Virus record (IMG/VR): IMGVR_UViG_3300042887_005053
Coordinates: 140,337 to 204,336 of that record
Length of the DNA: 64,000 nucleotides
Strand: one strand, 5' to 3'
The position numbers and the translations under genes were made by a program. The stretch's first letter is position 1. Each line of letters begins with the position of its first letter. Under the pieces are notes generated by a model. The model was not told the DNA's origin. It saw nothing but the letters and a program-made list of their open reading frames with translations, and did no database searches. Positions 14,531 through 64,000 of the stretch are shown piece after piece.

Positions 14531-15901
14531 ATGACTAAAATATCAAATTATTCACAATTTATAACAGAAGCATTTCTAAATAAAACACAAGAAAAAGCTA
14601 TTGACACTATTCTACAATACCTTAAAAAGAAAATAGGTGTTGATTTTTATTCATATGAAGAAATATGGAACATTCAAAAAAGTGACGAGTTTCTTAAAGG
14701 TCAACTTTTTTTAACTCTATCATCAAATAAAGCAATTAGATTTAACTGGATCGAAAGAGACATATCAAGTGAGATACATTCAATAGATCTATGGACTGAT
14801 TTTGAATTTGATTCTAATCCTGACTTCACTTTACTATTAAATGAACTTTCGGTTGTTAAGGCTTTGCCTCATGTAGTAGACTTTTATAAAAATCCAGAAA
14901 TAATAGTAAAAACAAGTAAGAAAGATGTAGTATTTGAAGATTTAGAAATCGAGGATACTGATCCAAGAAAAAGACTTGAAGATGAAAGAAAAAAACTATC
15001 AAGATTAAGAAGTCCTGAGAAAATTGAACTTCAGAAAAGAAAAATAGAAAGAATAGAAGCAATTGTTGCACAAACTGAAAACTCTTCTATTGAAAGTGAA
15101 AAAATAAATCAACTTGATGATGAAATGAAAATTGATGTTTTTAAATCAATCGAACTTTATACTACTCAAGTTGCAAGAGGCAAGTCAAACTCATTGATTA
15201 TATCTGGTGATTCGGGTGTTGGAAAGACCCAAACCGTGAAAGATACCTTAACTTCACTTGGTATGAGAAAAGATGATGATTATTATTTTGCAACTGGTAC
15301 TGCAACAACAGCTGGTTTATATGAATTACTATTTAAGAACCGAAACAAACTAATTGTATTTGATGACTGTGATTCGGTATTAAAAGATCCAGAATCGGTC
15401 AATATATTAAAAGGAGCACTTGATACCTATGATGTTAGAGAAATATCTAAATTATCGAAAGGTAATACTTTTGATTCATCTGGATTAAGTGATGAAGAAG
15501 TTGATGTCCAGTTTAGCGAGACTGGTAAGTTTCCAAATAAATTCGATTTTACTGGACAAGTAATATTTATATCGAACTTACCAGAAAATAAATTTGATAA
15601 AGCACTATTATCGAGAAGTTTACATGTTGATGTGCATTTAGATAGACAAGAATTATTCGAAAGAATGAAGTCTATAATGACAAGAATATCTCCAGATGTA
15701 GATTTTGAGAAGAAACTGGAGGCATTAGAATATTTAACTTTTATATGTAACACTTATCCAACTAAGTTTGATCTTAATATCAGAACATTAATACATTCAA
15801 TCAATTTGAGAGCTCATAATGAAGAAATGATTAAGATTGGTGACAAAGAAGAACAAGTTTGGAAAGTTTTAATTAAAAAATATTTGGTTAAGTCAAGATG
15901 A
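14531..15901 (+). CDS. AAA+-type P-loop ATPase with tag-like N-terminus
   Basis: Walker A GDSGVGKT, Walker B IVFDDCD, sensor IFISN and an SRS arginine finger. The start is moved to 14531 because the ATG at 14525 overlaps the promoter motif. Confidence 0.8.
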   Translation: MTKISNYSQFITEAFLNKTQEKAIDTILQYLKKKIGVDFYSYEEIWNIQKSDEFLKGQLFLTLSSNKAIRFNWIERDISSEIHSIDLWTDFEFDSNPDFTLLLNELSVVKALPHVVDFYKNPEIIVKTSKKDVVFEDLEIEDTDPRKRLEDERKKLSRLRSPEKIELQKRKIERIEAIVAQTENSSIESEKINQLDDEMKIDVFKSIELYTTQVARGKSNSLIISGDSGVGKTQTVKDTLTSLGMRKDDDYYFATGTATTAGLYELLFKNRNKLIVFDDCDSVLKDPESVNILKGALDTYDVREISKLSKGNTFDSSGLSDEEVDVQFSETGKFPNKFDFTGQVIFISNLPENKFDKALLSRSLHVDVHLDRQELFERMKSIMTRISPDVDFEKKLEALEYLTFICNTYPTKFDLNIRTLIHSINLRAHNEEMIKIGDKEEQVWKVLIKKYLVKSR

Positions 15902-16476
15902 AACATTTAGAACTATTTGAATCATTCACTCTTATTAGTGAGAATCTGAAATATCATGTTGATAATAATATTCCGGTTTTAGAGAATGTGTTTAGACCAC
16001 ATTCAAAAGCTTTTTATGATTTGATAAAAGAAGCAAGAAATCTATTTGATGGTGGTAAAATTGGTGTATCAGAACATGATAAACATTTATTTGAAACAAC
16101 CGATTTAGGTTACTTTGATATATTTGAGAATGAAGTAGTACCACTTGATTTACCGATTGAAGTTGTTGAGGAAGTAAATGAGGCTGAGTATCACGGAAAA
16201 GAAGTTGAATTAAATAAACCAATTAGAAGTTCTGGTCCTAAAAAATATAAAGTTTATGTCAGGAATCCTAAAACTAAAAAAGTTATATGTGTTAATTTCG
16301 GGGATGTGAAAGGTGGACTAACTGCTAAAGTAAGTGATCCAGATGCTCGTAGAAGTTTTGCTGCTCGTCATCAATGTCACCTAAAGAAAGATAAGACAAA
16401 GCCTGGTTACTGGGCCTGTCGTGCGAATAGATACGCTAATTTGTGGGGTGGTAAAACATATCCCGGATACTGGTAA
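15898..16476 (+). CDS. Tagged protein with basic C-terminal domain (DUF6321-like)
   Basis: Starts MKHLELFESF. C-terminal KKYKVYVRNPKT...VNFGD...ARRSFAARHQC...PGYWACR. Confidence 0.6.
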   Translation: MKHLELFESFTLISENLKYHVDNNIPVLENVFRPHSKAFYDLIKEARNLFDGGKIGVSEHDKHLFETTDLGYFDIFENEVVPLDLPIEVVEEVNEAEYHGKEVELNKPIRSSGPKKYKVYVRNPKTKKVICVNFGDVKGGLTAKVSDPDARRSFAARHQCHLKKDKTKPGYWACRANRYANLWGGKTYPGYW

Positions 16477-16490
16477 AAATATATAGAACT

Positions 16491-17399
16491 ATGAAATACT
16501 TAAATACCTACAAATTATTTGAATCAGAAGAAGTAGTAAGCAACGAAGAAGTTACTGAACTAATTGAAGAGTGTAAAGACATTGTTGAGACATTCAATGA
16601 GTCAGAAGATACTTTTAAAGTAGCTAATTATGAAACGGGATTTGTTGCATATGACTCTTATTTGAAAAGAATAAGAAGTGGTGACTTTGACTCGAGACAG
16701 TCACATGAATCTGATATGGCTGCTATTAAATTTAATCTTGGTTTATCAAGTGATTTGAGTAACGGATATTTTAGAGATAACGAAGAAAGTGTTACTACAG
16801 AAAAAATAGACGGATTAATTGAACTATTGAGTAAATCGAAGATACTAGTTCAGAGATTGTCGAGATATTGTACTACAATTTATTATAAAATGACAGGTAA
16901 CTCAATTAGATTCATTTTAATATTCAAAAATCCAGATGAGGGTAGTAGTAAGGCAGCAAAAGTTACAAGATTATATAACAAGCTATCAAAAGATTTTAAA
17001 GATTATGACATGTGGAAAACTATGAATTTGGTTCAACTTAATCAAAGATCAAATGATAGAATTCCAGAAAAATATAGAGAGTTATATAGTTTACTTAAAA
17101 CTAATCCTAATCTAATTGATGGTAGATATGGTCAATGGGATGAAACAAGAAGAAGTAATTTACAGTTAAGATTTTCTTGTTCTGAAACATTTGATGGTAA
17201 TACAATTATTGTTAATGTCACTGGATTCAAATACAAAACATATATGATGGATAGATTCAAATCAATTAGATTATCTAATGAAGAGAAAGTAGAAGCAATG
17301 AAATGCATCGAACAGAAAGTTAAAAATAGTTTAAGAAGTGATGCCGATTCAATTGAAACTTCAATTGAAGGAAATCAGATAAAAATTAAGGTGAAATAA
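16491..17399 (+). CDS. Tagged hypothetical protein
   Basis: Starts MKYLNTYKLFES. A late motif lies at 16477-16486. Confidence 0.65.
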   Translation: MKYLNTYKLFESEEVVSNEEVTELIEECKDIVETFNESEDTFKVANYETGFVAYDSYLKRIRSGDFDSRQSHESDMAAIKFNLGLSSDLSNGYFRDNEESVTTEKIDGLIELLSKSKILVQRLSRYCTTIYYKMTGNSIRFILIFKNPDEGSSKAAKVTRLYNKLSKDFKDYDMWKTMNLVQLNQRSNDRIPEKYRELYSLLKTNPNLIDGRYGQWDETRRSNLQLRFSCSETFDGNTIIVNVTGFKYKTYMMDRFKSIRLSNEEKVEAMKCIEQKVKNSLRSDADSIETSIEGNQIKIKVK

Positions 17400-17638
17400 T
17401 GAAATACTTAAAGAAGTTTGAAGGATTTTCTAACAGAACTTGTGATAGATGTGGCGAGCGAACTAATACAATGAGTATGTCCTGGTTAAACACAGATGAG
17501 TGTTGTATGAATTGTTTAGAAATTGAAAAAGGAGAACCAGATTATATTTTGGCTAAAGAAATAGAATCCGAAGAAGTTAGAAAAGGTAATCTAAACTATA
17601 AAGGTATAAGAAATGAAGATAAACTGACACCGAGATAG
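17399..17638 (+). CDS. Tagged small zinc-finger protein
   Basis: Starts MKYLKKFEGF and contains CDRC...CCMNC. Confidence 0.65.
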   Translation: MKYLKKFEGFSNRTCDRCGERTNTMSMSWLNTDECCMNCLEIEKGEPDYILAKEIESEEVRKGNLNYKGIRNEDKLTPR

Positions 17639-17666
17639 AGAAGACTATATTATTAATATATAATTT

Positions 17667-18788
17667 ATGAATTTAGAAATAATTTATAAAAAAATATGTC
17701 AAAGAGGTCAAATAAGAGTATTAGATAGATCCATCTATACAGAAAAACATCATATTATTCCGAGATGTATGGGAGGTAACAACAATAAGGAAAATATAAC
17801 TAAATTAACCGCTAAAGAACATTTTATCTGCCATAAAATTCTATGTAAAATTTATCCATCCAACGAAAAGTTAAGATATGCCTTTTGGGCAATGTGTAAT
17901 CAAAAAGTAAATAGAGATTATGTGGTTTCTAGTAGAGATTATGAATATGCTAAAACAATTTGTTTAGAAATGTGGAGAAGACCAAAATCCCCCGAATCCA
18001 TAAAAAAAGGAGCAGATAAAAAAAGAGGCATAAAGGTAAATTATTTTATTTACCCAAAACGGATACAAGATGGTAATTCTAATCACAATCACGGTAAAAA
18101 GTGGATAACTAATATTTTAACAAGTGAATCAAAAATGATATTTGGTGATATTCCAGATGGATGGAAAATAGGAAGATCAAAAGTTGGCAGTTTGTGCAAA
18201 CCAAATTCAAAAGGTAGAAATTGGTATCATAATCCAGAAACAAATGAAGAAAAATACTTCAATTTTTCCGATAATCCACCAGGATGGATTAAGGGTAGAT
18301 CTAAAAATAAAAAAATTGGAGGAGATAATCTCTCCGGTAAGATTTGTTATTTCAACAAATCACTAAATAAAGAGAAATATTTTAAAGATGATGATATAAT
18401 ACCAGATGGGTGGATCAAGGGTAAGTTAAAAAAAAGAATTTGGTTTTATAATCTTGAATTAAATATGGAAAAATTATTCACTGAAGATTCCGCAGATGTT
18501 GGTTTTATTCGAGGTAGATTACCTAAATTACCATTTAGTGAAGAAATGAAAGAAACAAATGAATTTATAAGAATTTTTAAAAGAGACATAGATGAAAAAT
18601 CACTTGTTTGGCATAGAGATAGAGAAGATAGAATTATTGAGTCGATTGGTGAAACTGATTGGATGATACAATTAGATAATGAACTGCCAAAGTCGTTAAA
18701 TCAAAAAGTGTTCATTCCAAAAGGAGTTTATCATAGAGTTATAAAAGGAACTAATAATTTGAAAATAAAATTAATTAAATTAGTTTAA
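17667..18788 (+). CDS. HNH homing endonuclease fused to a C-terminal cupin-like domain
   Basis: EKHHIIPRCMGG...NITKLTAKEHFICH, then four WxxNxxxxxEK...PxGWxKG repeats, then LVWHRDREDR...FIPKGVYHRVIKG. Confidence 0.75.
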   Translation: MNLEIIYKKICQRGQIRVLDRSIYTEKHHIIPRCMGGNNNKENITKLTAKEHFICHKILCKIYPSNEKLRYAFWAMCNQKVNRDYVVSSRDYEYAKTICLEMWRRPKSPESIKKGADKKRGIKVNYFIYPKRIQDGNSNHNHGKKWITNILTSESKMIFGDIPDGWKIGRSKVGSLCKPNSKGRNWYHNPETNEEKYFNFSDNPPGWIKGRSKNKKIGGDNLSGKICYFNKSLNKEKYFKDDDIIPDGWIKGKLKKRIWFYNLELNMEKLFTEDSADVGFIRGRLPKLPFSEEMKETNEFIRIFKRDIDEKSLVWHRDREDRIIESIGETDWMIQLDNELPKSLNQKVFIPKGVYHRVIKGTNNLKIKLIKLV

Positions 18789-18798
18789 TATATAGAGT

Positions 18799-19380
18799 AT
18801 GAAACATTTGAAATTATTTGAAGAATTTATTGATTTCAACTTAGATTGGGTATCAGCCAAAATGAATGAACTATCAGATTTGGTATCTGATTTTTCAAAT
18901 ATTGAGTTTAAATATCATATTGAAAAAGTCAAGGATAATGAAGATTTACAGGGTCTTTTAGTTATAGAACTTACAGCGACTGATGCGAACATAACTCTTA
19001 TATGGACTATTGATTTAGACTCTCCATCAATTACTATTGAAGAAATTGAAGGTGATGAACATGAAAATATTTATGATTCAAAACTTGAAAGTATTGAACA
19101 AGCTCTTGATTTAGTTGAGAAAAATATACAAGATTTATTTGATATTAATGAGAGAGTCAAGGCTCAAAGATATAAAGGAAAAAAAATACCTGGTAAATAC
19201 TTAGCTGGACCACATCCTGGAAAAATGAAGAAGGAAATTGATAAGTATAGAGGTAAAAGTGAATATAAAAAAGAATGGGATGCTGATTATACTACTGGAA
19301 AAGGTGGTAAAGGTAAAAGAGTAAAAACTAAGAAATCATCAGCCACAAAAGCTTACCAAAAAATGTTTGGTGATAAATAA
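18799..19380 (+). CDS. Tagged protein, acidic N-half and very basic C-terminal domain
   Basis: Starts MKHLKLFEEF. After DINE comes Lys-rich KIPGKYLAG...KTKKSSATKAYQKMFG. Confidence 0.65.
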   Translation: MKHLKLFEEFIDFNLDWVSAKMNELSDLVSDFSNIEFKYHIEKVKDNEDLQGLLVIELTATDANITLIWTIDLDSPSITIEEIEGDEHENIYDSKLESIEQALDLVEKNIQDLFDINERVKAQRYKGKKIPGKYLAGPHPGKMKKEIDKYRGKSEYKKEWDADYTTGKGGKGKRVKTKKSSATKAYQKMFGDK

Positions 19381-19391
19381 AAATATATTTC

Positions 19392-19952
19392 ATGGAAATT
19401 AAGAAATTTATTCGTCAAGAAAAAACTACAAATGTAGAAAAACCACAAACAAGTGGAACAGTAATCACTCCTTCAAAGTTGACTGAAGAAACCATTTCAA
19501 TTTTGACTGAAAGAATAAAAGATGAGTATACTGCTCACTATTTCTATAGATCAGCTGCTAACTGGTGTCGTAACATGAACTATAAAAAAGCATCACAATT
19601 CTTTGATAATGAATCAAGTTCAGAATTAGAACATGCTAAAGGATTACAAGAGTATATGGATGACTTTAATGTTCAACCACATATTCTACAAACAGAAACA
19701 AACTTTGAGTTTGATTCATTAGTTGATATTATAAATGGTGCATATCAAATGGAACATTCGTTGATGAATTCATATAATCAAAGTTCATCAGCATTATTTA
19801 CTACTGACTTAACTACATTTGATTTCTTAGCTAATTATAGAACAATTCAAAAAGAAGCTGTAATTGAGTATTCTGATTTATTGAATGCATTAATGTTAGT
19901 AAATCATACTGATAAGTTTCAGGTTCTTTATTTTGAACAAACATATTTTTAA
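19392..19952 (+). CDS. ftnA: Ferritin (non-haem FtnA-like)
   Basis: Ferroxidase-centre pattern EYTAHYFY...ELEHA...MEHSL...TTFDFL...IQKEAVIE. Confidence 0.8.
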   Translation: MEIKKFIRQEKTTNVEKPQTSGTVITPSKLTEETISILTERIKDEYTAHYFYRSAANWCRNMNYKKASQFFDNESSSELEHAKGLQEYMDDFNVQPHILQTETNFEFDSLVDIINGAYQMEHSLMNSYNQSSSALFTTDLTTFDFLANYRTIQKEAVIEYSDLLNALMLVNHTDKFQVLYFEQTYF

Positions 19953-19956
19953 TACA

Positions 19957-20217
19957 GTGAAATACTTAAAGAAATTTGAAGCATATACATTCGAGGACTT
20001 TACTCTCAGTGATATTGAAGATGTTAAAGATTTGTTAGAATATGGTTTGCCTATTGAACAAATTGCGATAGAATTAGACTTTACGGTCGATAAAGTGAAA
20101 CAAATAGTTCACTCTATTGAAAAGAATAAAAAAACGACTACAAAAGGATGTGGTTGTTGTTCAGATTGTACCGGTGAAGTGGATTGTGAATGTGGTTGTG
20201 TTGAGTGTGAATGCTAA
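19957..20217 (+). CDS. Tagged small protein with HTH-like segment and Cys-rich metallothionein-like tail
   Basis: The GTG start at 19957 gives MKYLKKFEAY. Contains GLPIEQIAIELDFTVDKVKQI and the tail GCGCCSDCTGEVDCECGCVECEC. Confidence 0.65.
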   Translation: MKYLKKFEAYTFEDFTLSDIEDVKDLLEYGLPIEQIAIELDFTVDKVKQIVHSIEKNKKTTTKGCGCCSDCTGEVDCECGCVECEC

Positions 20218-20253
20218 AAATTAGTTACTATAAACTATAAATAAAATTATTAT

Positions 20254-20625
20254 ATGGAAAAATTAATGACATTCGAATCTTTCTCTGATGAAATAGATTA
20301 TGAAAACTACTACTATTTAGTAGAAGATATATTACTACTTGAAGAAGTAACAGCTGGGTCAGTTGATACTGCTGGGTCAAAAGCATCAAAGATGATAAAA
20401 AAGAAATCAGAACAAAGTGGTATTCCTGTTGGAATTCTTAAAAAGGTTTATAAGCGAGGGCAAGCTGCTTGGAATGCTGGTCATCGTCCAGGTACACCAC
20501 AACAAGCTTGGGCTACTGGTAGGGTAAATAGTTTTATAACTGGTGCTGGTGGAGCTAGAAAAGCTGACAATGACTTATGGGCAAAAGCTAAAGCTGCTAA
20601 AGCTAGAAAAAAGAAGAAAAAATAA
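20254..20625 (+). CDS. Tagged protein with basic DUF5824-like domain
   Basis: Starts MEKLMTFESF and contains SGIPVGILKKVYKRGQAAWNAGHRPGTPQQAWATGRVNSF. Confidence 0.6.
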   Translation: MEKLMTFESFSDEIDYENYYYLVEDILLLEEVTAGSVDTAGSKASKMIKKKSEQSGIPVGILKKVYKRGQAAWNAGHRPGTPQQAWATGRVNSFITGAGGARKADNDLWAKAKAAKARKKKKK

Positions 20626-21089
20626 TGAAATACTTAAAAAGATTTAATGAAAATTTAGATAATAATTCTTATAAAATTCATATACCCGAAAAATATTCAG
20701 GGGTTAGAATGGAATTTGGGGAATTTGCCTCACCACAAGACATAATTGATACGTACAATCAGATAGTAGAAGAAGGAGTTCCTTTGGTAAGTTATTCCGA
20801 GGATGGGTTCTTCACTAATGAAGATGATGAAGAAATTGAAGAGTTTATAATTCTTGATGAATTGAATTATGCTATTGTTGGTGAAGAAGAAGATAATATG
20901 GGAGATTTACCAAAACAAAAAAGATTTGGTGATGGTAATGAAAATGAAATCTATTTAACCAATAATGTAAGATTCCACCGTAAAGGGAATGAGTTAACTT
21001 TAAGTTACACCCCAACTAAAATTGGAGGGGGACTTAGAATATCTGATGAACAGAAGAATATGTTAATTGATTTTTTAACCAAGAATTAA
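20625..21089 (+). CDS. Tagged acidic hypothetical protein
   Basis: Starts MKYLKRFNEN. Confidence 0.6.
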   Translation: MKYLKRFNENLDNNSYKIHIPEKYSGVRMEFGEFASPQDIIDTYNQIVEEGVPLVSYSEDGFFTNEDDEEIEEFIILDELNYAIVGEEEDNMGDLPKQKRFGDGNENEIYLTNNVRFHRKGNELTLSYTPTKIGGGLRISDEQKNMLIDFLTKN

Positions 21090-23230: not shown

Positions 23231-24793
23231 ATGACGAATTCCGATTTAAACAAAGACACTAGATGGATAGAAAAAAACTATCCATCTTTTTTTTGTGATA
23301 TTAGTAACTACACTAGTATAGATATTCCTTGGAAAGAAAAATATTTTTGGAGTGTTAATGGAATCAAGGATAAACCTAAATGTACAATCTGTGATAATGA
23401 ACTAAAATTTTTGTCTATAAAAAAGGGTTATACTAAATTCTGTTCTAGAAAATGCACGGCCATTGGCACTATCGATAAGAAAAAAAATACTTGTATTCAA
23501 AAATATGGTGTTGATAATCCAATGAAATCCGAGATGATAAAGGATAAGTTTGATAAACTAATAACTGAAAAGTATGGTGTATCAAACATCTCAAAATTAT
23601 TAGACACAAAGGATAAAAAGAAAAATACTATGTTGTTGAATTATGGTGTTGAGTATAATTCACAAAGAGATGAGGTTAAGAGTTTACTTTCAGAAAAAAT
23701 GGTTCAAAAGTCAAGTGAAATGAACTATAAAAGATCACTTCAAATATTTGAAAATCTTAATAAAAAAATAGAAATGTTTGATATTAAATTAGTATCAGTC
23801 AAATCATCTAATTATCAGTTTGAATGTTTTAATTGTGGTGAAGTTTTTGCCATACATAAAAACACTCTTAATGATAGAATACGAAATCAAAACACAATTT
23901 GTACAATATGTAATAAAATTGACAACACATCTAATTCACAGGAGATAATTTTGGATTTTATTAAATCGATTTATAACGGTCCTATAAAATCAAATGATAG
24001 ACATTTAGGATTTGAGTTAGATATATATTTACCAGAGTTAAAAATAGCATTTGAATATAACGGTGTGTACTGGCATTCAGATGAATTCAAAGATAAAAAA
24101 TATCATTTTAACAAGACTAAAATGTGTAGTGAGAATGGTATAAAACTAATTCATATTTGGGAAGATTTCTTCATATCAAAGAGAAATATAGTTTTGTCAA
24201 GAATATCTAATCTTCTTGGAAACAGTAAAAGAGTTCACGGAAGAAATTGTAAAGTTTCATTTATTAGTAATGACGAGTATGTAAAGTTTATAGAAGAAAA
24301 CCATCTACAGGGTTATGTAGTATCAAAATACAGAATAGGAATTTATTACAATAATGATTTATACGGTGTTATGTCTTTTGGTGGTCTTAGAAAAGCACTC
24401 GGTCAAAAAAGTGAGAGTGGAACTTATGAGTTATTGAGGTTTTGTAACAAAAATGGATATACTATTGTTGGTGGAGCATCTAAGATGTTGAATTTTTTTA
24501 TTAAGAATATTTGTCCAAATAAAATAATTAGTTATGCTGATAAATCTTGGTCATCCGGTAGTATTTATTATAGGTTAGGTTTTAGATTTGATTCTGAGAC
24601 TGCTCCTAATTATTATTACATAAAAAATGGAGTTAGATACAACAGATTTTCCTTTAGAAAAGATATTTTAGTTAGAAATGGAGAAAACAGTTCTTTGTCT
24701 GAGTCTGAGATTATGAGAAAGAATAAATATTACAAAATATATGACTCTGGTAATTACAAATTTATTTGGGAAAATAAAAATCCAATCATTTGA
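23231..24793 (+). CDS. Hef-like homing endonuclease (KYGV repeats, Zn ribbon, PD-(D/E)xK/Vsr-like nuclease, C-terminal GNAT/Mom-like domain)
   Basis: KYGVDNPMKS repeats, ELDIYLPELKIAFEYNGVYWHS, and FIEENHLQG...YELLRFC...GGASKML...SYAD. Confidence 0.7.
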   Translation: MTNSDLNKDTRWIEKNYPSFFCDISNYTSIDIPWKEKYFWSVNGIKDKPKCTICDNELKFLSIKKGYTKFCSRKCTAIGTIDKKKNTCIQKYGVDNPMKSEMIKDKFDKLITEKYGVSNISKLLDTKDKKKNTMLLNYGVEYNSQRDEVKSLLSEKMVQKSSEMNYKRSLQIFENLNKKIEMFDIKLVSVKSSNYQFECFNCGEVFAIHKNTLNDRIRNQNTICTICNKIDNTSNSQEIILDFIKSIYNGPIKSNDRHLGFELDIYLPELKIAFEYNGVYWHSDEFKDKKYHFNKTKMCSENGIKLIHIWEDFFISKRNIVLSRISNLLGNSKRVHGRNCKVSFISNDEYVKFIEENHLQGYVVSKYRIGIYYNNDLYGVMSFGGLRKALGQKSESGTYELLRFCNKNGYTIVGGASKMLNFFIKNICPNKIISYADKSWSSGSIYYRLGFRFDSETAPNYYYIKNGVRYNRFSFRKDILVRNGENSSLSESEIMRKNKYYKIYDSGNYKFIWENKNPII

Positions 24794-34501: not shown

Positions 34502-37500
34502 TTATTGATTTATAAATCCACCTGCAGAAATTGCTCCTGTTCTGAGAATTGTGATGTTGTTTACAATAACTCCCATACCCTTAATAGGTTCAACATATGT
34601 GTCAAGAACACCAATTTGGTTATCTATTATAGTTGGTGTGTTATTTTCTTCATCACATTTGTTGAAGTAGTTATAAAGACCGTTCTTATTAACATACTTT
34701 TCACAGATTACATCAGCTCTTAGTTTTATTTCAGCTCTTATTTCAGCTGTATTAAACTTCCATTGGAATTCAAGTAACATTGCTGAAAGTTCTCTTTCTA
34801 ATTCAATCAAGACCTCTCTAACATGTAAGTAAGAAAGTGCTGATTTGTAAAGAGTTTGACCTGTATTTTCTGTTTCAATTACAAATCCTCTATTTCTCTT
34901 GAATACAATAGGATTCATTTGAGCTCCGTTCAAGTTTTCGATATCCTCAGGAGTATAATTCATTTCGATTCCTGCGATATTTGTAACTCTACCGTTAGTA
35001 ACACCCGCTGCAATTGTCCAAGGAACAATTGAAGTAACATTTGTATTCTGTTTTCTCATATATGTAGTAGCTACATACATTGCTGGTGGTACATCAGCTG
35101 GTCTACCGTTATCATTAACTGTGACATAAGGAAGAAAATAACCAACACAACTTGCACCCCTTCCGTCGCCGAATGAGTATAAGAATGCTGGACTAGATTC
35201 TAAGTCACCGCCTGTTGCAATAAAGGATGTTTGTAAGACTCCTTCGTTATTAACAAATGTAGGTGATGTAGAGTTCCTAAATGACTTCATTGAAGGCATA
35301 TTTATGAATCCTAAGCAATCTAATCTATCTCCACAAACATCAACCAATTGCTGTTTTGATCTCTCAGTTAAACCTAATCCAAATGCATCTACAACATATC
35401 TAAAGTCGATAGCTTCTTTATTTGTAAGTGCCTTGAACAATGGTGTTCCCTTTGCAATCAAGTTTAAAATAGTGCTTTGTCTTGTTTCAGTACCATCTGG
35501 CATTGAAGCTTCTCTTACTCTGAATCCTTTTAGTGGAATAGCCTTATAAGTAGAAACATAATCATCCATTGATGTATATCTAATTGTCTGATAATCTACC
35601 GAGTTACCATTTGTTACCGCGTATTTTTCGATAGCTGAATCACAAGTGATTTCAACTAAGGTTGTATCAGGTGCGTAAACTCTCTTACTGATAATTCTAG
35701 TTAGATTTCTTGTCATCTCACCTACATTTACTGGAACATTAGGATCTACATAAGCCTCTAAGAAATCACCAACTTTTACTTCAGTGTATCTTGAACCATT
35801 TACTAAGATCTTATTAACAATTGGAGTGTAACCAGCTGGTACTTCGATTTCAATAGTTTGTTTGTAATTTGACTTGTTAGTTATAACATTAAATATGTTA
35901 TTTTTTGTTACATCAATTGGTTCAGTTGATGTTAATAAAGAATCTACAAACTTAACAGTCAAATTGTTTGAACTATCTAAGTACATTTGTAAATAAACTT
36001 TAGTAGTAGCATCATAAACAAAAGGTGTAGAAGTGATATCCTCATCTACTACATTTGTAGTAACTCTATATGCTTCATACCCAGCTGTGTAATTACTGCC
36101 CGTTAGTGGGTCAACTAAAGTGTTATAATAGTTAGTATCTCCATCAAGAGTTATTGTACCAGTGTTTAGTGTAGAATCTGGAATGCTAATTTGTTCATTT
36201 CCTAAAACATTCCAACCATTAGTTTGACTGAAGACCACATAACTGTAAGTGCCTTCATTTTGAAAAACTACTCTGATAGGTGATTGTGGATAAGATGACT
36301 CAATTAGATTATCATAAAAATAGTCACCAGTATTAATTTGACCATTGTAGAAGTTGTTATATAAATCTGCAAACTTACCCACAACACCAGAAGCAGTTGG
36401 ACTTCCTTTGACTGTTGTGGTCGTTACTCCGTTTGGTCCTAAGACTAACTCATTATCAATTTTATAGAAAACTAAGTTACCAGCTAATATATCAGATGGA
36501 GTTGATGACAAACCTAAATCTAAATCAAAAGACTTGTTAGCAGTTGTTGATACGACAACATTACTAAGTGTCGCATTTGCTAGTGGGAATTTTTCTAAGG
36601 TAACTAAATCTTTCAACATAGTCATCTGAGATAGATTATTCTCTAACATACTAGAGAAGAAATTAAATAATCTAATCTTTCTGTGTTTCTCGTAATTGTT
36701 TGTTGTGTCTGTACCAGAAGTCCCTAAGAACTCTACTCTGATTTTACCTGCTGATAATTCAGTAACATCATAATCGACACCAAAGTCAAGTTCATTGAAA
36801 CCACCATCAACACCTCCGGATATAGTAAGTGAGTTTGTATTTACAGTAATACTTGCGGAACCAGCAAGAAGTGTGTTAGTAAATACATCACCGTTGTATA
36901 GTGCTCCTGAACCTGCATCAGGTGTTATTATAAATGATGTGGTAAGACCTAGTGTTGAAACTGTTGCTGAATAACCAGTTACGCTTGCCACAACAAAGTC
37001 TAAATAAACAGAGTTCAAGAATGTATCTAGTACATCTGAACTTGCTGTTGTTGAAAGAATCTGAGAACCATTAAGATTCAACACAAAGTTACTTTCTACC
37101 GGAATTCCAGATGAAGTACCTCCGAATAAGAAAGTAATTGGAGACGGATCTGTAAGTTCATTAACACCTATTTCAGTCACCGTTGGAGTGTTACCAACAG
37201 TCTGTAAAATCTGACCATTTGCAACTTGAAAGTCAATGTAAGTTAAAACAATGTCACTTGATGGTATTGTTGGGTTAATTCCATCAACGGTTCCATTAGT
37301 CAAAGTAATTTCTCCAGTTGAAGAATTAATATGTACCACTGAAGTGTAAGAAGCGGTTTGTGAACTAACTGTGTAGTTAGTTGCTAGAATAGAGTAAGTA
37401 AATGAACCAGCAGTCCCAGAATTCACTAACACTTTATTACCAGCAGTTACAATATAAGCCTCTGAAGCAGTTAATGAACCCAATGATGGATTTGTAAGAG

Positions 37501-38725
37501 TGTATCCAATTTGAAGTGATTGTGAACCACCAAGTGATTCTAAAGCTGTTTCATAAGTAACACCATTGATATATTCTTCTGAGAAATGTGCTGTTCTGTT
37601 AACTCCACCCCAAGTTGAACGAGCTAGTGAAACTGATGGACCCATTGCGACTAAGTTTTGTCCGTCTGATCCACCCGCTATGTCTAATGGCGTTGCTATG
37701 TAATCTAGGCTTTCAATGATTGATACATTATATGATAGGAAATCTATTTCAACTTGACCATTGTTAACAAGACCCTCAGAGACAACTAAGTTGTTACCTA
37801 TAAGGTCAACCATTCCAGTTGGGAAGTCTTTCTCAAACTTATCCATATCAAATGCACAAAATAGACCAGTTCTATCTGTATCATTATTTATGATTGTCTC
37901 AATAAATATATTTCTACCGTTTGAATCTCTGAAAAATGGAATCAAAGAAAGGCCTTCATAGTACTGTAACAAATTAACATTTCTATCATTTGCAAAATTT
38001 TGAACTTGATCTTTCATAAGACCTTGGCTAGTAAAATAGGCAGACCATTTGGTATCAACTGCTAATTGTTGGTAATTTGACCAATCACCACCAACTACTA
38101 AAACATCTACTAAATAGTCTGAAGCATAATCCAATTGGTTAACATAAGATGGAACTTTATCAGCTGAACCATACCACTCTAGTAATGTTCTGTTGAAACC
38201 ACTTAATCTTGACTTAAATACAAAAATTGTAATGTATTTATCTGACATATTAGTGAAAGACAACAATCTGTCTGCCGCTCCTAAGTCGTCACTTGTAAGA
38301 TTAATGAAAGAATCAGTATCTCTTTTCCAGAAACCAGTTGTGTCGAAAAATCTTCTATATGCACCCTCTCTTACAACATCATTTGTTTTATCAGTAGATG
38401 TTGATACTGACTTATATTCTATAAGGTCTAAAGTATCCGATGTAGATAATAGATTCATTGCGAATACTGGACTCGACTCTAGCATTTTGCTAACAGTTCT
38501 ATGAAAGAAAGAACCCTTTCTTTCTAAATTTCTGTCTAGTGGTCCAAATATACTTTCTAAATCCTGTGTAGTCTGTAAGAAAACAGGTGTATTAGCTGGT
38601 CCTTTTTTTGAGAAACCAACTACCAATGAGCTTACACCAGTTACGGTTGGGCTGACAATAACTGAATTATCAAATTCTTCTATGAAGATACCTGGTCTTT
38701 TATACTTACCAATTTGAATTGCCAT
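34502..38725 (-). CDS. gp18: Contractile tail sheath protein (T4 gp18-like) with large insertions
   Basis: N-terminal RPGIFIEEFDNS...VVGFSKKGPANTP and C-terminal ALSYLHVREVLIELE...CDEENNTPTIIDNQIGVLDTYVEP. Confidence 0.92.
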   Translation of the reverse strand: MAIQIGKYKRPGIFIEEFDNSVIVSPTVTGVSSLVVGFSKKGPANTPVFLQTTQDLESIFGPLDRNLERKGSFFHRTVSKMLESSPVFAMNLLSTSDTLDLIEYKSVSTSTDKTNDVVREGAYRRFFDTTGFWKRDTDSFINLTSDDLGAADRLLSFTNMSDKYITIFVFKSRLSGFNRTLLEWYGSADKVPSYVNQLDYASDYLVDVLVVGGDWSNYQQLAVDTKWSAYFTSQGLMKDQVQNFANDRNVNLLQYYEGLSLIPFFRDSNGRNIFIETIINNDTDRTGLFCAFDMDKFEKDFPTGMVDLIGNNLVVSEGLVNNGQVEIDFLSYNVSIIESLDYIATPLDIAGGSDGQNLVAMGPSVSLARSTWGGVNRTAHFSEEYINGVTYETALESLGGSQSLQIGYTLTNPSLGSLTASEAYIVTAGNKVLVNSGTAGSFTYSILATNYTVSSQTASYTSVVHINSSTGEITLTNGTVDGINPTIPSSDIVLTYIDFQVANGQILQTVGNTPTVTEIGVNELTDPSPITFLFGGTSSGIPVESNFVLNLNGSQILSTTASSDVLDTFLNSVYLDFVVASVTGYSATVSTLGLTTSFIITPDAGSGALYNGDVFTNTLLAGSASITVNTNSLTISGGVDGGFNELDFGVDYDVTELSAGKIRVEFLGTSGTDTTNNYEKHRKIRLFNFFSSMLENNLSQMTMLKDLVTLEKFPLANATLSNVVVSTTANKSFDLDLGLSSTPSDILAGNLVFYKIDNELVLGPNGVTTTTVKGSPTASGVVGKFADLYNNFYNGQINTGDYFYDNLIESSYPQSPIRVVFQNEGTYSYVVFSQTNGWNVLGNEQISIPDSTLNTGTITLDGDTNYYNTLVDPLTGSNYTAGYEAYRVTTNVVDEDITSTPFVYDATTKVYLQMYLDSSNNLTVKFVDSLLTSTEPIDVTKNNIFNVITNKSNYKQTIEIEVPAGYTPIVNKILVNGSRYTEVKVGDFLEAYVDPNVPVNVGEMTRNLTRIISKRVYAPDTTLVEITCDSAIEKYAVTNGNSVDYQTIRYTSMDDYVSTYKAIPLKGFRVREASMPDGTETRQSTILNLIAKGTPLFKALTNKEAIDFRYVVDAFGLGLTERSKQQLVDVCGDRLDCLGFINMPSMKSFRNSTSPTFVNNEGVLQTSFIATGGDLESSPAFLYSFGDGRGASCVGYFLPYVTVNDNGRPADVPPAMYVATTYMRKQNTNVTSIVPWTIAAGVTNGRVTNIAGIEMNYTPEDIENLNGAQMNPIVFKRNRGFVIETENTGQTLYKSALSYLHVREVLIELERELSAMLLEFQWKFNTAEIRAEIKLRADVICEKYVNKNGLYNYFNKCDEENNTPTIIDNQIGVLDTYVEPIKGMGVIVNNITILRTGAISAGGFINQ

Positions 38726-60140: not shown

Positions 60141-61823
60141 ATGGCTTCTTACAATCCACTCAATTCTCAAAATCAGAATAACACATATATTTCATCAGCG
60201 GTTGAAAATAAGGGTTTATTCAATAGACTTCTTAGAAATCTTTCTAATTTTGGAATGAGATATGATGATATGATTATCAGAAATACCGTAGGTGTTGGTA
60301 TTAATGAAGATCCATACTCACAAAAAAATAATTCGATGTATGACTTCTTTAGTCAGAAGGCCGTTTCATCAGTATTAAACAGAAAGTCAGTTCCTTATTT
60401 GGATAGATCATATGCGGATAAAAGAAGAATTCTAAGAGAGTATTCAATTAAAGATGAACTAAGAGATTTCGTTTCTGCAGTTGCTGATGAGTCGATTATC
60501 TATAATGATGACAAAGACTTCTGTGCACCTAAGCCTCTTTCAAATGATTATTCACAAGATATAAAGGATAAGTATCAAGAATATTTTGAAGTAATCTATC
60601 ACAGATTTGGTTTTGGTGATAGTATAACAGCTTGGAATATGATGAAAGACTTTTTGATTGATGGTTATGTTGCAATTGAAATAGTTTGGGATGACAAAAA
60701 GAAGAATATCATACATTTTAATAGATTAAGACCAGAAACATTAGTACCAGCTTATGAACCTTCAGTTGGTAATCTTTGGATTCAATATCCAGAAGATCCG
60801 CAATTAAGAAGAATATTTCTTGATTCACAGATTGTATTTGTTTCTTACTCAACACAGAATGATTATTCCGAGACTTCTTATTTAGAGGGTCTAATTAAGC
60901 CGTATAATCAATTAAAGATATTAGAGCAAACTAGAATTATGTTTAACATAATTAATGCTACTATTTATCAAAAATTTACAATCCCAATTAAGGGATTACC
61001 AAGACAAAGAGCTGAAGAACAAATTGGGCAATTAATAGCTGACTATTCAGAGGAAATTGAATGGGATGACACATTAGGAACAGTTTCTATCAATGGTAGA
61101 AAACATTTACCCTATAATAAACAAGTTTGGTTCCCAGAAGGTGATGCTGGTACTCCAGCAATGGAATTGGTATCACCAGAGGGTCATAACTTAAATGAGA
61201 ATGATATGTTAACTTGGTTTTACAACATTCTTAAAAGAGCTTCTAAGATTCCTTTCCAGAGATTTGAGAAAGAGAATGGTGGTGGTAACATATTTAGTGA
61301 TGCATCTGAGATGACTAGAGATGAAATAAAGTTTAATAACTTTATCAATCGACTAAGAGCAAATTACAAAGAGTTGATTGTAAAACCTCTAAAGCTTCAA
61401 ATGTGTATGGAATTCCCAGAGTTGAAAGATGATGAGGTTTTCCTAAATCAATGTGACATTAATTTCAATTCAAATCAATTGTTCGAAGAGTGGAAGAAGT
61501 TGGCAAACTTTGAAAAAAGAGCTGGTATATTATCAACTTTATTAGGAATACAAACTGCTGATGGTCAACCATACTTTCACATCGATTATCTAATCGATAA
61601 AGTTATGAAATTATCTGAAGAAGAAAAGCAAGAAAACAAAGCATACTGGATCAAATCGACTAAAGGTGGTGGTGAAGCTGGTGAGGTCGAAGGTGGAATG
61701 GAGGGAGCTGAGGCTGGAATGGAAGGTGGTGAAGCACCAACTGAAACACCTGAGGCAGCAACTGAGACACCTCCAGCTGAAGAGGGAGGAGGTGAAGCTC
61801 CACCGTCAGAATTCGAATTCTAA
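60141..61823 (+). CDS. gp20: Portal protein (T4 gp20-like)
   Basis: FLIDG, SYLEGLIKPYNQLKILE, ILKRASKIPFQR and EMTRDEIKFNNFINRLR. Confidence 0.92.
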   Translation: MASYNPLNSQNQNNTYISSAVENKGLFNRLLRNLSNFGMRYDDMIIRNTVGVGINEDPYSQKNNSMYDFFSQKAVSSVLNRKSVPYLDRSYADKRRILREYSIKDELRDFVSAVADESIIYNDDKDFCAPKPLSNDYSQDIKDKYQEYFEVIYHRFGFGDSITAWNMMKDFLIDGYVAIEIVWDDKKKNIIHFNRLRPETLVPAYEPSVGNLWIQYPEDPQLRRIFLDSQIVFVSYSTQNDYSETSYLEGLIKPYNQLKILEQTRIMFNIINATIYQKFTIPIKGLPRQRAEEQIGQLIADYSEEIEWDDTLGTVSINGRKHLPYNKQVWFPEGDAGTPAMELVSPEGHNLNENDMLTWFYNILKRASKIPFQRFEKENGGGNIFSDASEMTRDEIKFNNFINRLRANYKELIVKPLKLQMCMEFPELKDDEVFLNQCDINFNSNQLFEEWKKLANFEKRAGILSTLLGIQTADGQPYFHIDYLIDKVMKLSEEEKQENKAYWIKSTKGGGEAGEVEGGMEGAEAGMEGGEAPTETPEAATETPPAEEGGGEAPPSEFEF

Positions 61824-62415: not shown

Positions 62416-64000
62416 ATGAAACCTATACTAATCGTTGAAAACAATTCAAACCCATTGGTTGAGAATGTTCAAGTGTCTGGTGGTAGTAAGGATTATGTTT
62501 TAGGTGGTATTTTCACTGAGTTTGGTATTAAAAACCGTAACGAAAGAATCTATACTGCTGACAAATTCATTCCTTGTTTACAAGAGTTAAATGAGCGTAT
62601 CAACAACATGGGAGTTGTATATGGCGAATTTGATCACCCAGATGTTTTTGACACATCATTAGCAAGAGCATCACACACTATAAGAAAAGCTCATTATGTT
62701 AAAGAACATAACAGAGTTGAGGGTGAGATCAAATTGTTAAGTACATACTGGGGTAAGGAAGCTAAGGCTTTAGTTGATGATGGTTGTCCTGTATTCGTTT
62801 CTTCAAGAGCTGCTGGTATCACTGAATCTGATGGCACTGTTACTTTGAAGAAGTTGTTTACTTACGACATCGTTGCTGATCCTGGATTTGCTTCTGCTAG
62901 AATGAAATCAATTAATGAATCTTTTGGATTCACAGAACAAAATAACTTTAGGATATACGAAATGTCCGATGAGTCAAAAATAAACGAACTATTCAATATG
63001 AACAAGAATGAATTCGTTACCAAGCAGCAATTAGCTGACTATTCTAAGTATTTAGTAAATGAAATTGCTTCTACTAAGAAAGCTGCACAAACTGCTATTA
63101 AATCAGGTAACATCAATCCAAAGAAATTGGAGCAACTTCTTGAGTACTACGAAGAACTTAATAAGACAAATGCTCAAATGGTTAAGTATTTAGATTACTT
63201 GGCTGAGAAAGTACAAGTTGTTGTTAATGAAAACATTTCATTAAAGTCTACAACTGACAAATTAATTTCTCATAATGATTATTTAGCTGAGAATTTAGAA
63301 AAAGCTATTAATTATTCTGATTATATCGCTGAGAATTTGGATAAGAACATTTCTTATTCTGAATATTTGGCTGAAAATCTCGATAAGAACATTTCTTACT
63401 CTGAGTATTTAGCTGAGAATTTGGATAAGAATATCGCTTATTCTGAATATCTTGCTGAGAACTTAGATAAGAATATCGCTTATGCTGAGTATATTGCTGA
63501 AAATTTGGATAAGAACATTTCTTATTCTGAATATTTGGCTGAACATTTAGATAACTCTATTGCTTATTCTGAGTATTTAGCTGAACATGTTGAGGGTAAC
63601 ATTGCTTATTCTGAATATATCGCTGAACATTTAGATGACAACATCGCTTATTCTGAGTATATCGCTGAAAATCTTGACAAGACTGTTTCTTACGCAGGAA
63701 TGATAGCTGAGAAATTAAACACTACTAAATTAAATGAAAGTGTTGAAGAAAATACATTCCCAACATTAGAAGACGCTGGGTTCGCTATGATCGCAGCAGA
63801 AGAAGAAGGTGGAATGCCAATGCCTCGCATGCCTAAAGAAGAAGGTGATGCACATGAAGAGGAAGGTGATAACTTACCACATGTTATGGCATCTGAGGAA
63901 TCAGAATTGAGTAATGACAGTCACGAAACTCATGAAGAAGAGGGTGATAAATATGAGGAAGAAGGTGATAAATATGAGGAAGAAGGTGATAAATATGAAG
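62416..64000 (+). CDS. gp21: Prohead protease (T4 gp21-like) fused to scaffold-like repeat region (3'-truncated; absent from ORF track)
   Basis: Translated by hand: MKPILIVE...KNRNERIY...GEFDHP...SH...VSSRAAG...TYDIVADPGF. The frame stays open to the window end. Confidence 0.9.
   Translation, partial: MKPILIVENNSNPLVENVQVSGGSKDYVLGGIFTEFGIKNRNERIYTADKFIPCLQELNERINNMGVVYGEFDHPDVFDTSLARASHTIRKAHYVKEHNRVEGEIKLLSTYWGKEAKALVDDGCPVFVSSRAAGITESDGTVTLKKLFTYDIVADPGFASARMKSINESFGFTEQNNFRIYEMSDESKINELFNMNKNEFVTKQQLADYSKYLVNEIASTKKAAQTAIKSGNINPKKLEQLLEYYEELNKTNAQMVKYLDYLAEKVQVVVNENISLKSTTDKLISHNDYLAENLEKAINYSDYIAENLDKNISYSEYLAENLDKNISYSEYLAENLDKNIAYSEYLAENLDKNIAYAEYIAENLDKNISYSEYLAEHLDNSIAYSEYLAEHVEGNIAYSEYIAEHLDDNIAYSEYIAENLDKTVSYAGMIAEKLNTTKLNESVEENTFPTLEDAGFAMIAAEEEGGMPMPRMPKEEGDAHEEEGDNLPHVMASEESELSNDSHETHEEEGDKYEEEGDKYEEEGDKYE
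63274..63720 (+). repeat. About 11 copies of a 42-bp/14-aa repeat YSEY(L/I)AE(N/H)LDKNI(S/A)
   Basis: GAATAT at 63361 and GAGTAT at 63403 give period 42, with synonymous variation between copies. Confidence 0.92.
63937..64000 (+). repeat. 21-bp repeat encoding EEEGDKY (3 or more copies)
   Basis: GAAGAAGGTGATAAATATGAG-like units at the window end. Confidence 0.85.

What the first reader, a model, noticed from the sequence alone, without database searches (positions are those of the whole stretch)
15898..20625. Acidic pro-region / xxE site / basic domain architecture: protease-activated nucleic-acid binders
Seen: three tagged proteins switch abruptly from acidic to Lys/Arg-rich at a Glu-ending site. 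These are EEVNE|AEYHGK (16174-16182), FDINE|RVKAQRYKGKK (19141-19152) and ILLLEE|VTAG (20332-20346). Known: T4 gp21 cleaves after (I/L)-x-E. Inference: the acidic halves are intramolecular chaperones or DNA mimics removed in the maturing head, releasing basic DNA/RNA-binding domains. From recall, the basic parts of 18799 and 20254 resemble the two halves of one DUF5824-like domain, here split across genes flanking ferritin.
Basis: partly seen in the sequence, partly recalled or inferred. Interest (0 to 1): 0.72.

Follow-up and report, generated by a model that had tools for sequence, protein, structure and literature searches.

The report
Tagged acidic-basic phage head cargo proteins
Three small proteins of a huge T4-related phage join a shared N-terminal tag and an acidic part to a strongly basic module, separated by a conserved hydrophobic-x-Glu site; they look like capsid-packaged proteins trimmed by the head protease as in T4, but no cleavage or DNA binding was shown.

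Summary
Their length-normalised charge splits rank 7th, 3rd and 2nd of 203 proteins in the record.

Each boundary is a true module boundary:
- Stand-alone homologues in podophages and an archaeal virus start there.
- A [LIVM]-x-E triplet precedes the basic module in nearly all homologues (B: 50 of 53 cluster representatives against 33% background).

The B and C modules are fused, or adjacent genes, in many viruses. A follows them in some polyproteins. In this window, ferritin sits between B and C.

The window ends with a gp21-family head protease next to the portal gene. In T4-like marine phages the same modules carry 10-residue leaders that match the functional positions of T4's capsid targeting sequence.

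My best reading (confidence 0.55) is T4-type internal proteins: targeted to the prohead, cut after Glu, leaving basic modules in the head. Cleavage, virion location and nucleic-acid binding are all inferred. The "intramolecular chaperone or DNA mimic" idea has no support, and DUF6321 is absent.

Verdict: a new variant of a known kind, of moderately high interest.

The parts
15898..16182 (+). Protein A, tag (MKHLELFESF) plus conserved acidic N-half, ending in V-N-E (16174-16182)
   Evidence: The N-half is conserved in Flavobacterium phage immuto (51% identity) and in the Melnitz polyprotein. [ILVM]-x-E at this position in 106/113 homologues.
16183..16476 (+). Protein A, basic module (phrog_7595), begins AEYHGKEVELNKP
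   Evidence: phrog_7595 E 1e-11. Stand-alone homologues HTVC111P gp26 and Nitrosopumilaceae virus ORF8 start at this aligned position. L079 carries it behind a 10-residue CTS-like leader.
18799..19152 (+). Protein B, tag (MKHLKLFEEF) plus variable acidic N-half, ending in I-N-E (19144-19152)
   Evidence: Occurs as a stand-alone 123-aa protein ending ISE+KKKN in LR745206.
19153..19380 (+). Protein B, basic module (75 aa, 92% mean column identity among homologues; no Pfam or PHROG family)
   Evidence: The profile finds 92 cluster representatives with varied architectures. [LIVMF]-x-E lies upstream in 50/53.
19392..19952 (+). Ferritin-like gene lying between B and C
   Evidence: PF00210 E 3e-17. 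Absent between the B and C homologues of relative L014, where the two genes are 9 nt apart.
19957..20217 (+). Small tagged ORF (probable GTG start giving MKYLKKFEAY) with a Cys-rich C-terminus
20254..20346 (+). Protein C, tag variant (MEKLMTFESF) plus short acidic region, ending L-L-L-E-E (20332-20346)
   Evidence: The N-region varies from 15 to 130 aa in homologues while the site is kept. It has the same opening as the CTS-like leader of L074.
20347..20625 (+). Protein C, basic module = C-terminal part of DUF5824 (PF19141 positions 60-116)
   Evidence: PF19141 E 3e-14, 53.7 bits. phrog_28338 and phrog_3041. Confident helical model of a fused homologue.
20625..21089 (+). Tagged acidic protein whose N-domain is fused in front of a C module in other phages
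   Evidence: BLASTP to P0222: 48% identity, E 6e-24. Same gene order in relative L014.
16491..17638 (+). Two further tagged ORFs of the same co-directional cluster (302 aa and 79 aa)
62416..64000 (+). Head maturation protease of the gp21 family, cut off by the contig end, with a C-terminal array of about 9.5 tandem 14-residue units (42-nt period, 63276-63672) that each carry [LI]-A-E
   Evidence: phrog_207 E 2e-31. Peptidase_S80 25.2 bits (above cut-off) and Peptidase_S77 19.6 bits (below). tblastn to gp21 of T4-like cyanophages. Repeats.
60141..61823 (+). Portal protein, immediately upstream of the protease
   Evidence: phrog_213 E 1e-57.

Best explanation
A, B and C are T4-type internal (capsid-packaged) proteins of a huge T4-superfamily phage.

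Proposed mechanism:
1. The shared N-terminal tag, possibly helped by the acidic part, takes each protein into the assembling prohead core.
2. The gp21-family head protease then cuts after the Glu of the conserved [ILV]-x-E triplet at the module boundary.
3. The strongly basic modules (net about +17 to +19 each) are released and stay in the head with the DNA, and are probably ejected with it.

The three basic modules belong together. They form a recurrent B-C-A set that other phages encode as one polyprotein. Some phages fuse it behind a cytidylyltransferase-like enzyme. For the C (DUF5824) module there are also signs of fusions to head proteases.

Shown: the architecture, the module boundaries, conservation of the site, the module fusions, the presence of the protease, and CTS-like leaders in T4-like relatives.

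Inferred: targeting, cleavage, head location and DNA binding.
For: 1. Boundaries match the natural N-termini of stand-alone modules.

2. [LIVM]-x-E precedes the module across divergent homologues. For B it is 50/53 representatives at no more than 50% mutual identity, against 33% of background windows (p 9e-20). P1' is often G, A or S. For A it is 106/113 and for C 77/100. The site also lies between modules in the Melnitz and HTVC008M polyproteins.

3. The phage has a gp21-family protease beside its portal gene. T4 gp21 cleaves after L/I-X-E, and its relatives in phiKZ and SPN3US also cleave after Glu (PMC9026906). The protease's own C-terminal region carries about 9.5 tandem 14-residue units with [LI]-A-E.

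4. In T4-like marine phage contigs, the C, A and B modules sit behind 10-14-residue leaders such as MIKFKAYIAE, MLKFSQYIEE and MILTFGEFVNE. These have an aromatic residue at positions 4 and 7, I/V at 8 and E at 10. Those are the positions found to govern targeting (4, 7) and processing (8, 10) of the T4 IPIII capsid targeting sequence. Such leaders occur at 17% of module ORFs and 8.8% of neighbouring ORFs, against 0.5% of internal windows.

5. C's tag opens like the leader of L074 (MEKLM-TF-S), which links the huge-phage tag to those leaders.

6. ESM Atlas clusters combine DUF5824 with the Mu-like prohead protease family. XkdF-domain proteins and a portal cluster show a similar C-terminal fold.

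7. The tag is about 300-fold enriched at N-termini, and tagged proteins are acidic after the tag.
Against: - There are no proteomic, N-terminal or binding data of any kind.
- The modules also occur in podophages of Pelagibacter and Prochlorococcus and in an archaeal spindle virus. From general knowledge, T7-like podophages lack a prohead protease and spindle viruses have no such capsid, so the modules' function cannot depend on this pathway.
- The genes lie in a cluster with an AAA ATPase, a homing endonuclease and an Mre11-like nuclease, not in the head module.
- The modules are fused to a cytidylyltransferase-like enzyme, and PAP2 co-occurs with them at cluster level in the ESM Atlas. They lie near NAD-salvage genes in a relative. 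This would also fit a cytoplasmic role.
- The huge-phage tag keeps hydrophobic residues at positions 4 and 7 but lacks the I8/E10 processing positions.
- No known fold matched: PDB Foldseek found nothing with E below 1, so DNA binding rests on charge alone.
- The motif is short and common in acidic sequence.
- The fold-based links to protease and portal fusions are weak (E 0.1-0.2, partial alignments).
Confidence: 0.55

Rival explanations
1. The proteins are cytoplasmic accessory factors made of shuffled small modules, for example partners of nucleotidyltransferase or NAD-salvage enzymes, or RNA or ribosome binders. On this view the tag is a conserved first helix or an expression or sorting signal unrelated to capsids. 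The hydrophobic-x-Glu is simply the conserved end of a linker helix before each module, and no proteolysis occurs.
For: - Fusion to a CTP_transf_like domain in Melnitz and HTVC008M; PAP2 and CTP_transf_like co-occur with DUF5824 in ESM Atlas clusters.
- NAMPT and NUDIX genes lie next to the B-C pair in relative L014.
- The modules occur in podophages and an archaeal virus.
- The cluster lies outside the head gene module.
- The tag-like sequence lies internally, after a DUF4314 domain, in some B homologues.
Against: - This does not explain why the leaders reproduce the four functional positions of the T4 capsid targeting sequence.
- It does not explain why a protease-type site is kept at a fixed distance before the B module in 50/53 divergent representatives.
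- It does not explain why DUF5824 recurs fused to prohead proteases.
- T4 also packages an enzyme (Alt) through this route, so an enzyme fusion is not contradictory.
Confidence: 0.27
2. The acidic tagged parts are the functional units, as scaffold-core components of the very large prohead. The basic modules are then optional passengers that only neutralise charge. Cleavage serves to dismantle the core rather than to activate a binder.
For: - B's acidic half exists alone, ending four residues after the ISE site, in LR745206.
- The N-domain of ORF 20625 is an independent gene here and a carrier of the C module elsewhere.
- Tagged proteins are generally acidic.
- The acidic halves hold several further [LIVM]-x-E sites. 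This resembles the redundant sites in the propeptide regions of phiKZ head proteins.
Against: The basic modules are far more conserved than the acidic parts (92% against about 46% mean column identity). They also occur with only a 10-residue leader, so they are not mere passengers. This reading overlaps with the best explanation rather than excluding it.
Confidence: 0.12
3. The pattern is a compositional coincidence: low-GC phage proteins rich in Glu, Lys, Ile and Leu give acidic and basic stretches and [LI]-x-E triplets by chance.
For: 2-5 such triplets are expected by shuffling in each acidic half.
Against: - The charge splits are at the extreme of the proteome.
- The boundaries coincide with independently defined module starts.
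- The site is conserved far above background.
- The tag is strongly enriched at N-termini.
Confidence: 0.03

Closest known systems
Bacteriophage T4 internal proteins IPI, IPII, IPIII (and Alt), with the capsid targeting sequence and gp21 processing
   Same: - Small, mostly basic proteins with an N-terminal leader shared by otherwise unrelated proteins.
- A hydrophobic-x-Glu site between leader and mature part.
- A gp21-family protease in the genome.
- Homologous modules in T4-like marine phages carry 10-residue leaders with the T4 pattern at positions 4, 7, 8 and 10.
   Different: - No sequence similarity between the mature parts and the T4 IPs.
- In this phage the tag lacks the I8/E10 processing positions. 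The candidate site lies 31-118 residues in, after an acidic region or domain, so the presumed propeptide is far longer than T4's 10 residues.
- At least 15 proteins of a 204-kb fragment carry the tag.
- Packaging and cleavage are not demonstrated.
Processed head and inner-body proteins of phiKZ-like giant phages (phiKZ gp175, SPN3US gp245 proteases)
   Same: - Large phage with a diverged gp21-like protease; the window protein passes the Peptidase_S80 cut-off.
- Cleavage after Glu with few other determinants.
- Long propeptides with redundant sites.
- Many packaged proteins.
   Different: The motif reported for phiKZ is S/A-X-E, whereas the sites here have I, L, V or M at P3, as in T4. There is no homology of the cargo, and no evidence of an inner body.
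Pfam DUF5824 (PF19141) and the 'cytidyltransferase' proteins of T4-like pelagiphages (phrog_3041)
   Same: C is a member (53.7 bits). The B, C and A modules occupy the C-terminal part of the Melnitz 650-aa protein, and the B and C modules the C-terminal part of the HTVC008M 596-aa protein.
   Different: Here the modules are three separate genes, each with its own tag and acidic part, and no cytidylyltransferase was found in the record. The family has no assigned function and no literature in the searched library.
ChaB family (PF06150)
   Same: Weak fold resemblance to the C module (TM 0.54 by the ChaB model over 61 residues).
   Different: No sequence match, TM by query only 0.25, and ChaB's own function is unclear. 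This is a lead only.

Membership tests
Pfam DUF5824 (PF19141) | Score above the gathering cut-off (25 bits) against the profile | tested here: met
   C scores 53.7 bits, E 3e-14, on profile positions 60-116 of 127. It is the only match in the 204-kb record.
Pfam DUF5824 (PF19141), for protein B | The basic part of B aligns to the N-terminal half of the same profile | tested here: not met
   B and its basic part alone give no hit at E up to 1. In fused proteins the profile reaches back only to position 35-38, overlapping the last ~20 residues of the B module. B is a neighbouring module, not a scored member.
B-C(-A) module set of viral polyproteins | B module followed by C module, and optionally A module, in one polypeptide or as adjacent genes | tested here: met
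   Seen in P0405, P0396, P0382, P0384, P0375, P0385, P0433, P0428, P0410, Melnitz and HTVC008M. P0382 and P0384 also carry phrog_7595, the A module. B and C are adjacent genes in L014 and L015.
Pfam DUF6321 (PF19846) | Match to the profile | tested here: not met
   No hit for A, B or C at E up to 1 and none in the whole record at E up to 10. DUF6321 does co-occur with DUF5824 in other viral proteins.
T4-type internal proteins (CTS cargo) | N-terminal targeting leader with determinants at positions 4 and 7 | tested here: inconclusive
   The tag has L4 and F7 and is shared by at least 15 proteins. Relatives in T4-like phages have F/L4 and Y/F7. Function as a targeting signal was not tested.
T4-type internal proteins (CTS cargo) | Processing determinants I/L at position 8 and E at position 10 of the leader | tested here: not met
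   The tags of A, B and C have E/N at 8 and F at 10. The feature is met in small homologues of T4-like contigs, such as L080, L098, L099 and L088. Here the candidate site is displaced to the module boundary.
T4-type internal proteins (CTS cargo) | Cleavage by the prohead protease after L/I-x-E | not testable with these tools
   The sites V-N-E, I-N-E and L-L-E/L-E-E are present and conserved. No proteomic data.
T4-type internal proteins (CTS cargo) | Presence inside the mature head and ejection with DNA | not testable with these tools
   Only indirect evidence: DUF5824 fused to prohead protease families in other viruses.
gp21-type prohead protease (Peptidase_S77 / S80) | Homology of the protease domain | tested here: met
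   phrog_207 E 2e-31. Peptidase_S80 25.2 bits against a cut-off of 23.4; Peptidase_S77 19.6 bits, below its cut-off of 27. tblastn to 786 phage records including annotated gp21 of cyanophage S-TIM4 (33.6% identity). Catalytic residues were not checked. The genome-wide search missed it.
Ferritin-like (PF00210) | Profile match | tested here: met
   ORF 19392-19952: 63.2 bits, E 3e-17.

The most novel reading that the evidence does not exclude
The B, C (DUF5824) and A (phrog_7595) modules are an unrecognised, widespread class of capsid-internal, DNA-associated proteins. They are shared by T4-like marine phages and huge Bacteroidota-type phages and delivered by descendants of the T4 capsid targeting sequence. 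In the huge phages the leader has become the MKYLKxFExF tag, borne by dozens of proteins. These include a Nudix-like protein in a relative, which would imply a large protease-processed, injected proteome.
Probability: 0.4. Interest if true: 0.75.

Novelty: new variant of a known kind. Interest (0 to 1): 0.6.

Why it matters
If correct, this gives a testable function to DUF5824 and to two unnamed module families that are abundant in marine viromes (hundreds to thousands of homologues). It would extend the T4 capsid-targeting and gp21-processing logic to uncultured phages with genomes of about 600 kb. It would also provide a simple sequence rule (tag plus hydrophobic-x-Glu) for predicting which proteins such phages pack into the head and deliver to the host. 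The tag could in addition serve as a handle for loading foreign proteins into large capsids, as the T4 sequence already does.

Tried and rejected
- PF03420 and PF07068 searches of the record found nothing. The protease negative was a false negative, overturned. The major capsid gene probably lies beyond the contig end.
- Pairwise BLASTP of B's basic part against the Melnitz and HTVC008M proteins was only marginal (E 0.004-0.02). The link was settled by a profile search and by fused proteins.
- phmmer of the protease domain against PDB sequences: no hit.
- Foldseek of the fused B+C model against PDB: nothing with E below 1, so no fold-based function.
- The AlphaFold2 model of A was poor (mean pLDDT 65) and was used only for an Atlas look-up.
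- Complex prediction of B's acidic half with its basic module: score 0.02, no answer. It is not evidence either way.
- NCBIfam gave nothing for A, B or C.
- Literature searches for DUF5824, for the tag sequences, and for a capsid targeting sequence in marine or huge phages found nothing relevant.
- phiM12 gp458 was a weak C-module match (E 6e-5). Its virion status could not be read from the available paper.
- PHROG annotation of leader-bearing neighbours gave only 'unknown function'.
It was rebuilt without them.


Full report
**What the window is.** The window is the last 64 kb of a 204-kb IMG/VR virus record that CheckV rates 35% complete. Close homologues of its genes lie on contigs of 411-631 kb and in the 634-642 kb uncultured phages LR745206 and LR756502. 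It is therefore a fragment of a huge phage with about 30% G+C. Its head and packaging genes are of the T4 type:
- a large terminase with the T4-type N-domain (45446-47590);
- a 1407-residue tail sheath (34502-38725);
- a portal (60141-61823, phrog_213);
- directly after the portal, a head maturation protease that runs off the contig end (62416-64000).

The protease hits phrog_207 at E 2e-31. It passes the Peptidase_S80 cut-off and scores just under the Peptidase_S77 cut-off. By tblastn it matches 786 phage records, including annotated gp21 of T4-like cyanophages. An early genome-wide search for PF03420 missed it.

**The observation.** ORFs A (15898-16476, 192 aa), B (18799-19380, 193 aa) and C (20254-20625, 123 aa) exist as described. 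Normalised by length, these are the 7th, 3rd and 2nd strongest acid-to-base splits among 203 proteins of the record, and six of the top nine carry the same N-terminal tag. The tag (M-K-Y/H-L-K-x-F-E-x-F and variants) is found at 15 of 218 N-termini, against 15 internal matches in 64,041 residues. Tagged proteins are markedly acidic just after the tag. One caution applies: [LIVM]-x-E is common in acidic sequence, with 2-5 copies expected per acidic half, so a single site proves little.

**The boundaries are real module boundaries.**
- *A.* The basic part (phrog_7595) occurs as a stand-alone protein of 83-93 residues in Pelagibacter podophage HTVC111P and in a Nitrosopumilaceae spindle-shaped virus.
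- *C.* The stand-alone proteins of cyanophage MED4-184 and of HTVC111P start within a few residues of the site.
- *B.* The last 75 residues are nearly invariant (92% mean column identity) while the N-half is variable.

A hydrophobic-x-Glu triplet directly precedes each module:
- B: 26 of 26 aligned homologues, and 50 of 53 cluster representatives at no more than 50% mutual identity, against 33% of background windows (p 9e-20). The residue after Glu is often G, A or S.
- A: 106 of 113 homologues. These are close relatives, so the count is not independent.
- C: 77 of 100 homologues, with most of the rest shifted by one residue, even though C's N-region varies from 15 to 130 residues.

**The three modules belong together.** A profile of the B module found 92 cluster representatives among 1.84 billion proteins.
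- At least nine longer proteins, plus the small P0405 and P0396, carry the B module followed by a DUF5824 (C) module.
- P0382 and P0384 add the A module after them.
- In Methylophilales phage Melnitz, one 650-residue protein reads: cytidylyltransferase-like domain, B-like module, DUF5824 module, full A-like part. In Pelagibacter phage HTVC008M the first three form one protein and the A-like gene follows.
- In a relative of this phage the B and C genes are 9 nt apart. The ferritin gene and a small Cys-rich tagged ORF therefore lie here between two genes that are otherwise neighbours.

First, B does not score against PF19141. That profile covers the C module and only the tail of the B module. 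Second, the linker ranges from about 5 to 130 residues, so these are two modules rather than halves of one fold. An AlphaFold2 model of the fused P0405 agrees: both modules are confident but the overall pTM is 0.46. DUF6321 is not present.

**Evidence for the capsid-targeting and cleavage reading.** T4 gp21 cleaves after L/I-X-E. The first ten residues of IPIII are the capsid targeting sequence, with targeting depending mainly on positions 4 and 7 and processing on positions 8 and 10 (PMC9026906). I scanned IMG/VR with the C-module alignment.
- Many small DUF5824 proteins consist of a 10-14-residue leader plus the module, for example MIKFKAYIAE, MISFKSYIAE, MLNFKNYINE and MIRFSQYITE. These have an aromatic residue at 4 and 7, Ile at 8 and Glu at 10.
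- The locus of one of them is most similar to T4-like marine myoviruses, in the region of their 'cytidyltransferase' gene.
- The A module occurs behind MLKFSQYIEE, and the B module behind MILTFGEFVNE or MIKTWKEFVQE.
- Leaders of this type are at 17% of module ORFs and 8.8% of neighbouring ORFs, but only 0.5% of internal windows.
- The leader of L074 opens like the tag of C, which ties the huge-phage tag to these leaders.
- The window's protease has a C-terminal array of about 9.5 tandem 14-residue units (42-nt period), each with [LI]-A-E. That is what a protease-degradable scaffold-like segment would look like.
- Fold searches with the fused model returned ESM Atlas clusters in which DUF5824 co-occurs with the Mu-like prohead protease family. 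They also returned XkdF-domain proteins and a portal cluster with a similar C-terminal fold. These are weak but independent hints of a head-internal location.

**What is not supported.**
- Nothing here shows cleavage, virion location or nucleic-acid binding.
- The basic modules match no solved fold. The only resemblance is a weak one to ChaB.
- The idea that the acidic halves are intramolecular chaperones or DNA mimics has no support. The complex prediction gave no answer, and minimal homologues need only a short leader. B's acidic half is a complete protein in LR745206, ending four residues after the ISE site. A's N-half is a conserved domain in its own right. The N-domain of the neighbouring ORF 20625 serves as the carrier of a C module in other phages. 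The acidic parts look like exchangeable tagged carriers, possibly core or scaffold components.
- Several facts count against the whole model. The modules also occur in podophages and an archaeal virus. They are fused to a cytidylyltransferase-like enzyme, co-occur with PAP2 in Atlas clusters, and sit near NAD-salvage genes. The cluster lies outside the head gene module. The tag of this phage lacks the position-8 and position-10 processing residues.

**Verdict.** The most likely mechanism (confidence 0.55) is a T4-like scheme. Tagged proteins enter the prohead, the gp21-family protease cuts after the boundary Glu, and the basic modules remain with the DNA. The main rival (0.27) is a cytoplasmic role, with the site being a conserved linker end. 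This is a new variant of a known kind: new cargo families, a modified tag, and long acidic carriers instead of a 10-residue leader. I found no literature on DUF5824, on the tag, or on capsid targeting sequences in marine or huge phages.

Noticed in passing
window 63265-63672 and 63932-63998: The C-terminal part of the head protease holds about 9.5 tandem 14-residue units (42-nt period, consensus near N-I-S/A-Y-S-E-Y-L/I-A-E-N-L-D-K), each with an [LI]-A-E triplet. Acidic EEEGDKY repeats follow, and the gene is cut by the contig end. It looks like a protease fused to a degradable scaffold-like segment.
   Followed up: partly
window 19392-19952: A ferritin-like gene sits between B and C, which are adjacent genes in a relative (L014). 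Its product has about 35 residues ahead of the Pfam ferritin domain. Whether it is also packaged is unknown.
   Followed up: partly
window 19957-20217: The small ORF after ferritin probably starts at GTG 19957, giving a perfect tag (MKYLKKFEAY). It ends in a Cys-rich stretch. A similar Cys-rich motif lies between the C and A modules of the Melnitz polyprotein and at the end of P0077.
   Followed up: partly
window 20625-21089: The N-domain of this tagged acidic protein is 48% identical (E 6e-24) to the N-terminal part of P0222, where it is fused in front of a DUF5824 C module. The carriers and the basic modules recombine.
   Followed up: yes
L007 5998-6369 (LR745206, 634-kb phage): A 123-residue protein homologous to B's tag plus acidic half ends four residues after the ISE site and has no basic module. 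The same record has no DUF5824. Its neighbours carry the tag too, including a Nudix-like protein.
   Followed up: partly
G000:C1:105108-105662 (same record, outside the window): A fourth tagged protein (184 aa, MKYLKTFESY) has the same acidic-to-basic layout (-20/+10), with the split at T-N-E followed by A.
   Followed up: no
window 17667-18788 and 23231-24793: Homing or HNH endonuclease genes (phrog_655, phrog_3339); one interrupts the row of tagged genes.
   Followed up: no
L014 8044-11510: In the relative, the B-C gene pair lies beside NAMPT and NUDIX genes. In Flavobacterium phage immuto the A homologue follows a gene annotated NAD synthetase. In T4-like pelagiphages the modules are fused to a cytidylyltransferase-like domain. 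This is a recurrent but unexplained link to nucleotide or NAD metabolism.
   Followed up: no
L021-L100 (IMG/VR loci around DUF5824 genes): About 9% of neighbouring ORFs begin with a T4-CTS-like leader (M-x-x-F-x-x-F/Y-I/L-x-E). They include a conserved family of about 410 residues (phrog_455) that continues with a K-N-T-H-M-T-H-I-E-D motif. These may be clusters of internal-protein genes in T4-like marine phages.
   Followed up: partly
whole record: The genome-wide family search for PF03420 returned nothing, although the protease gene is present at window 62416. A negative from that first-look filter is not reliable for diverged members.
   Followed up: yes
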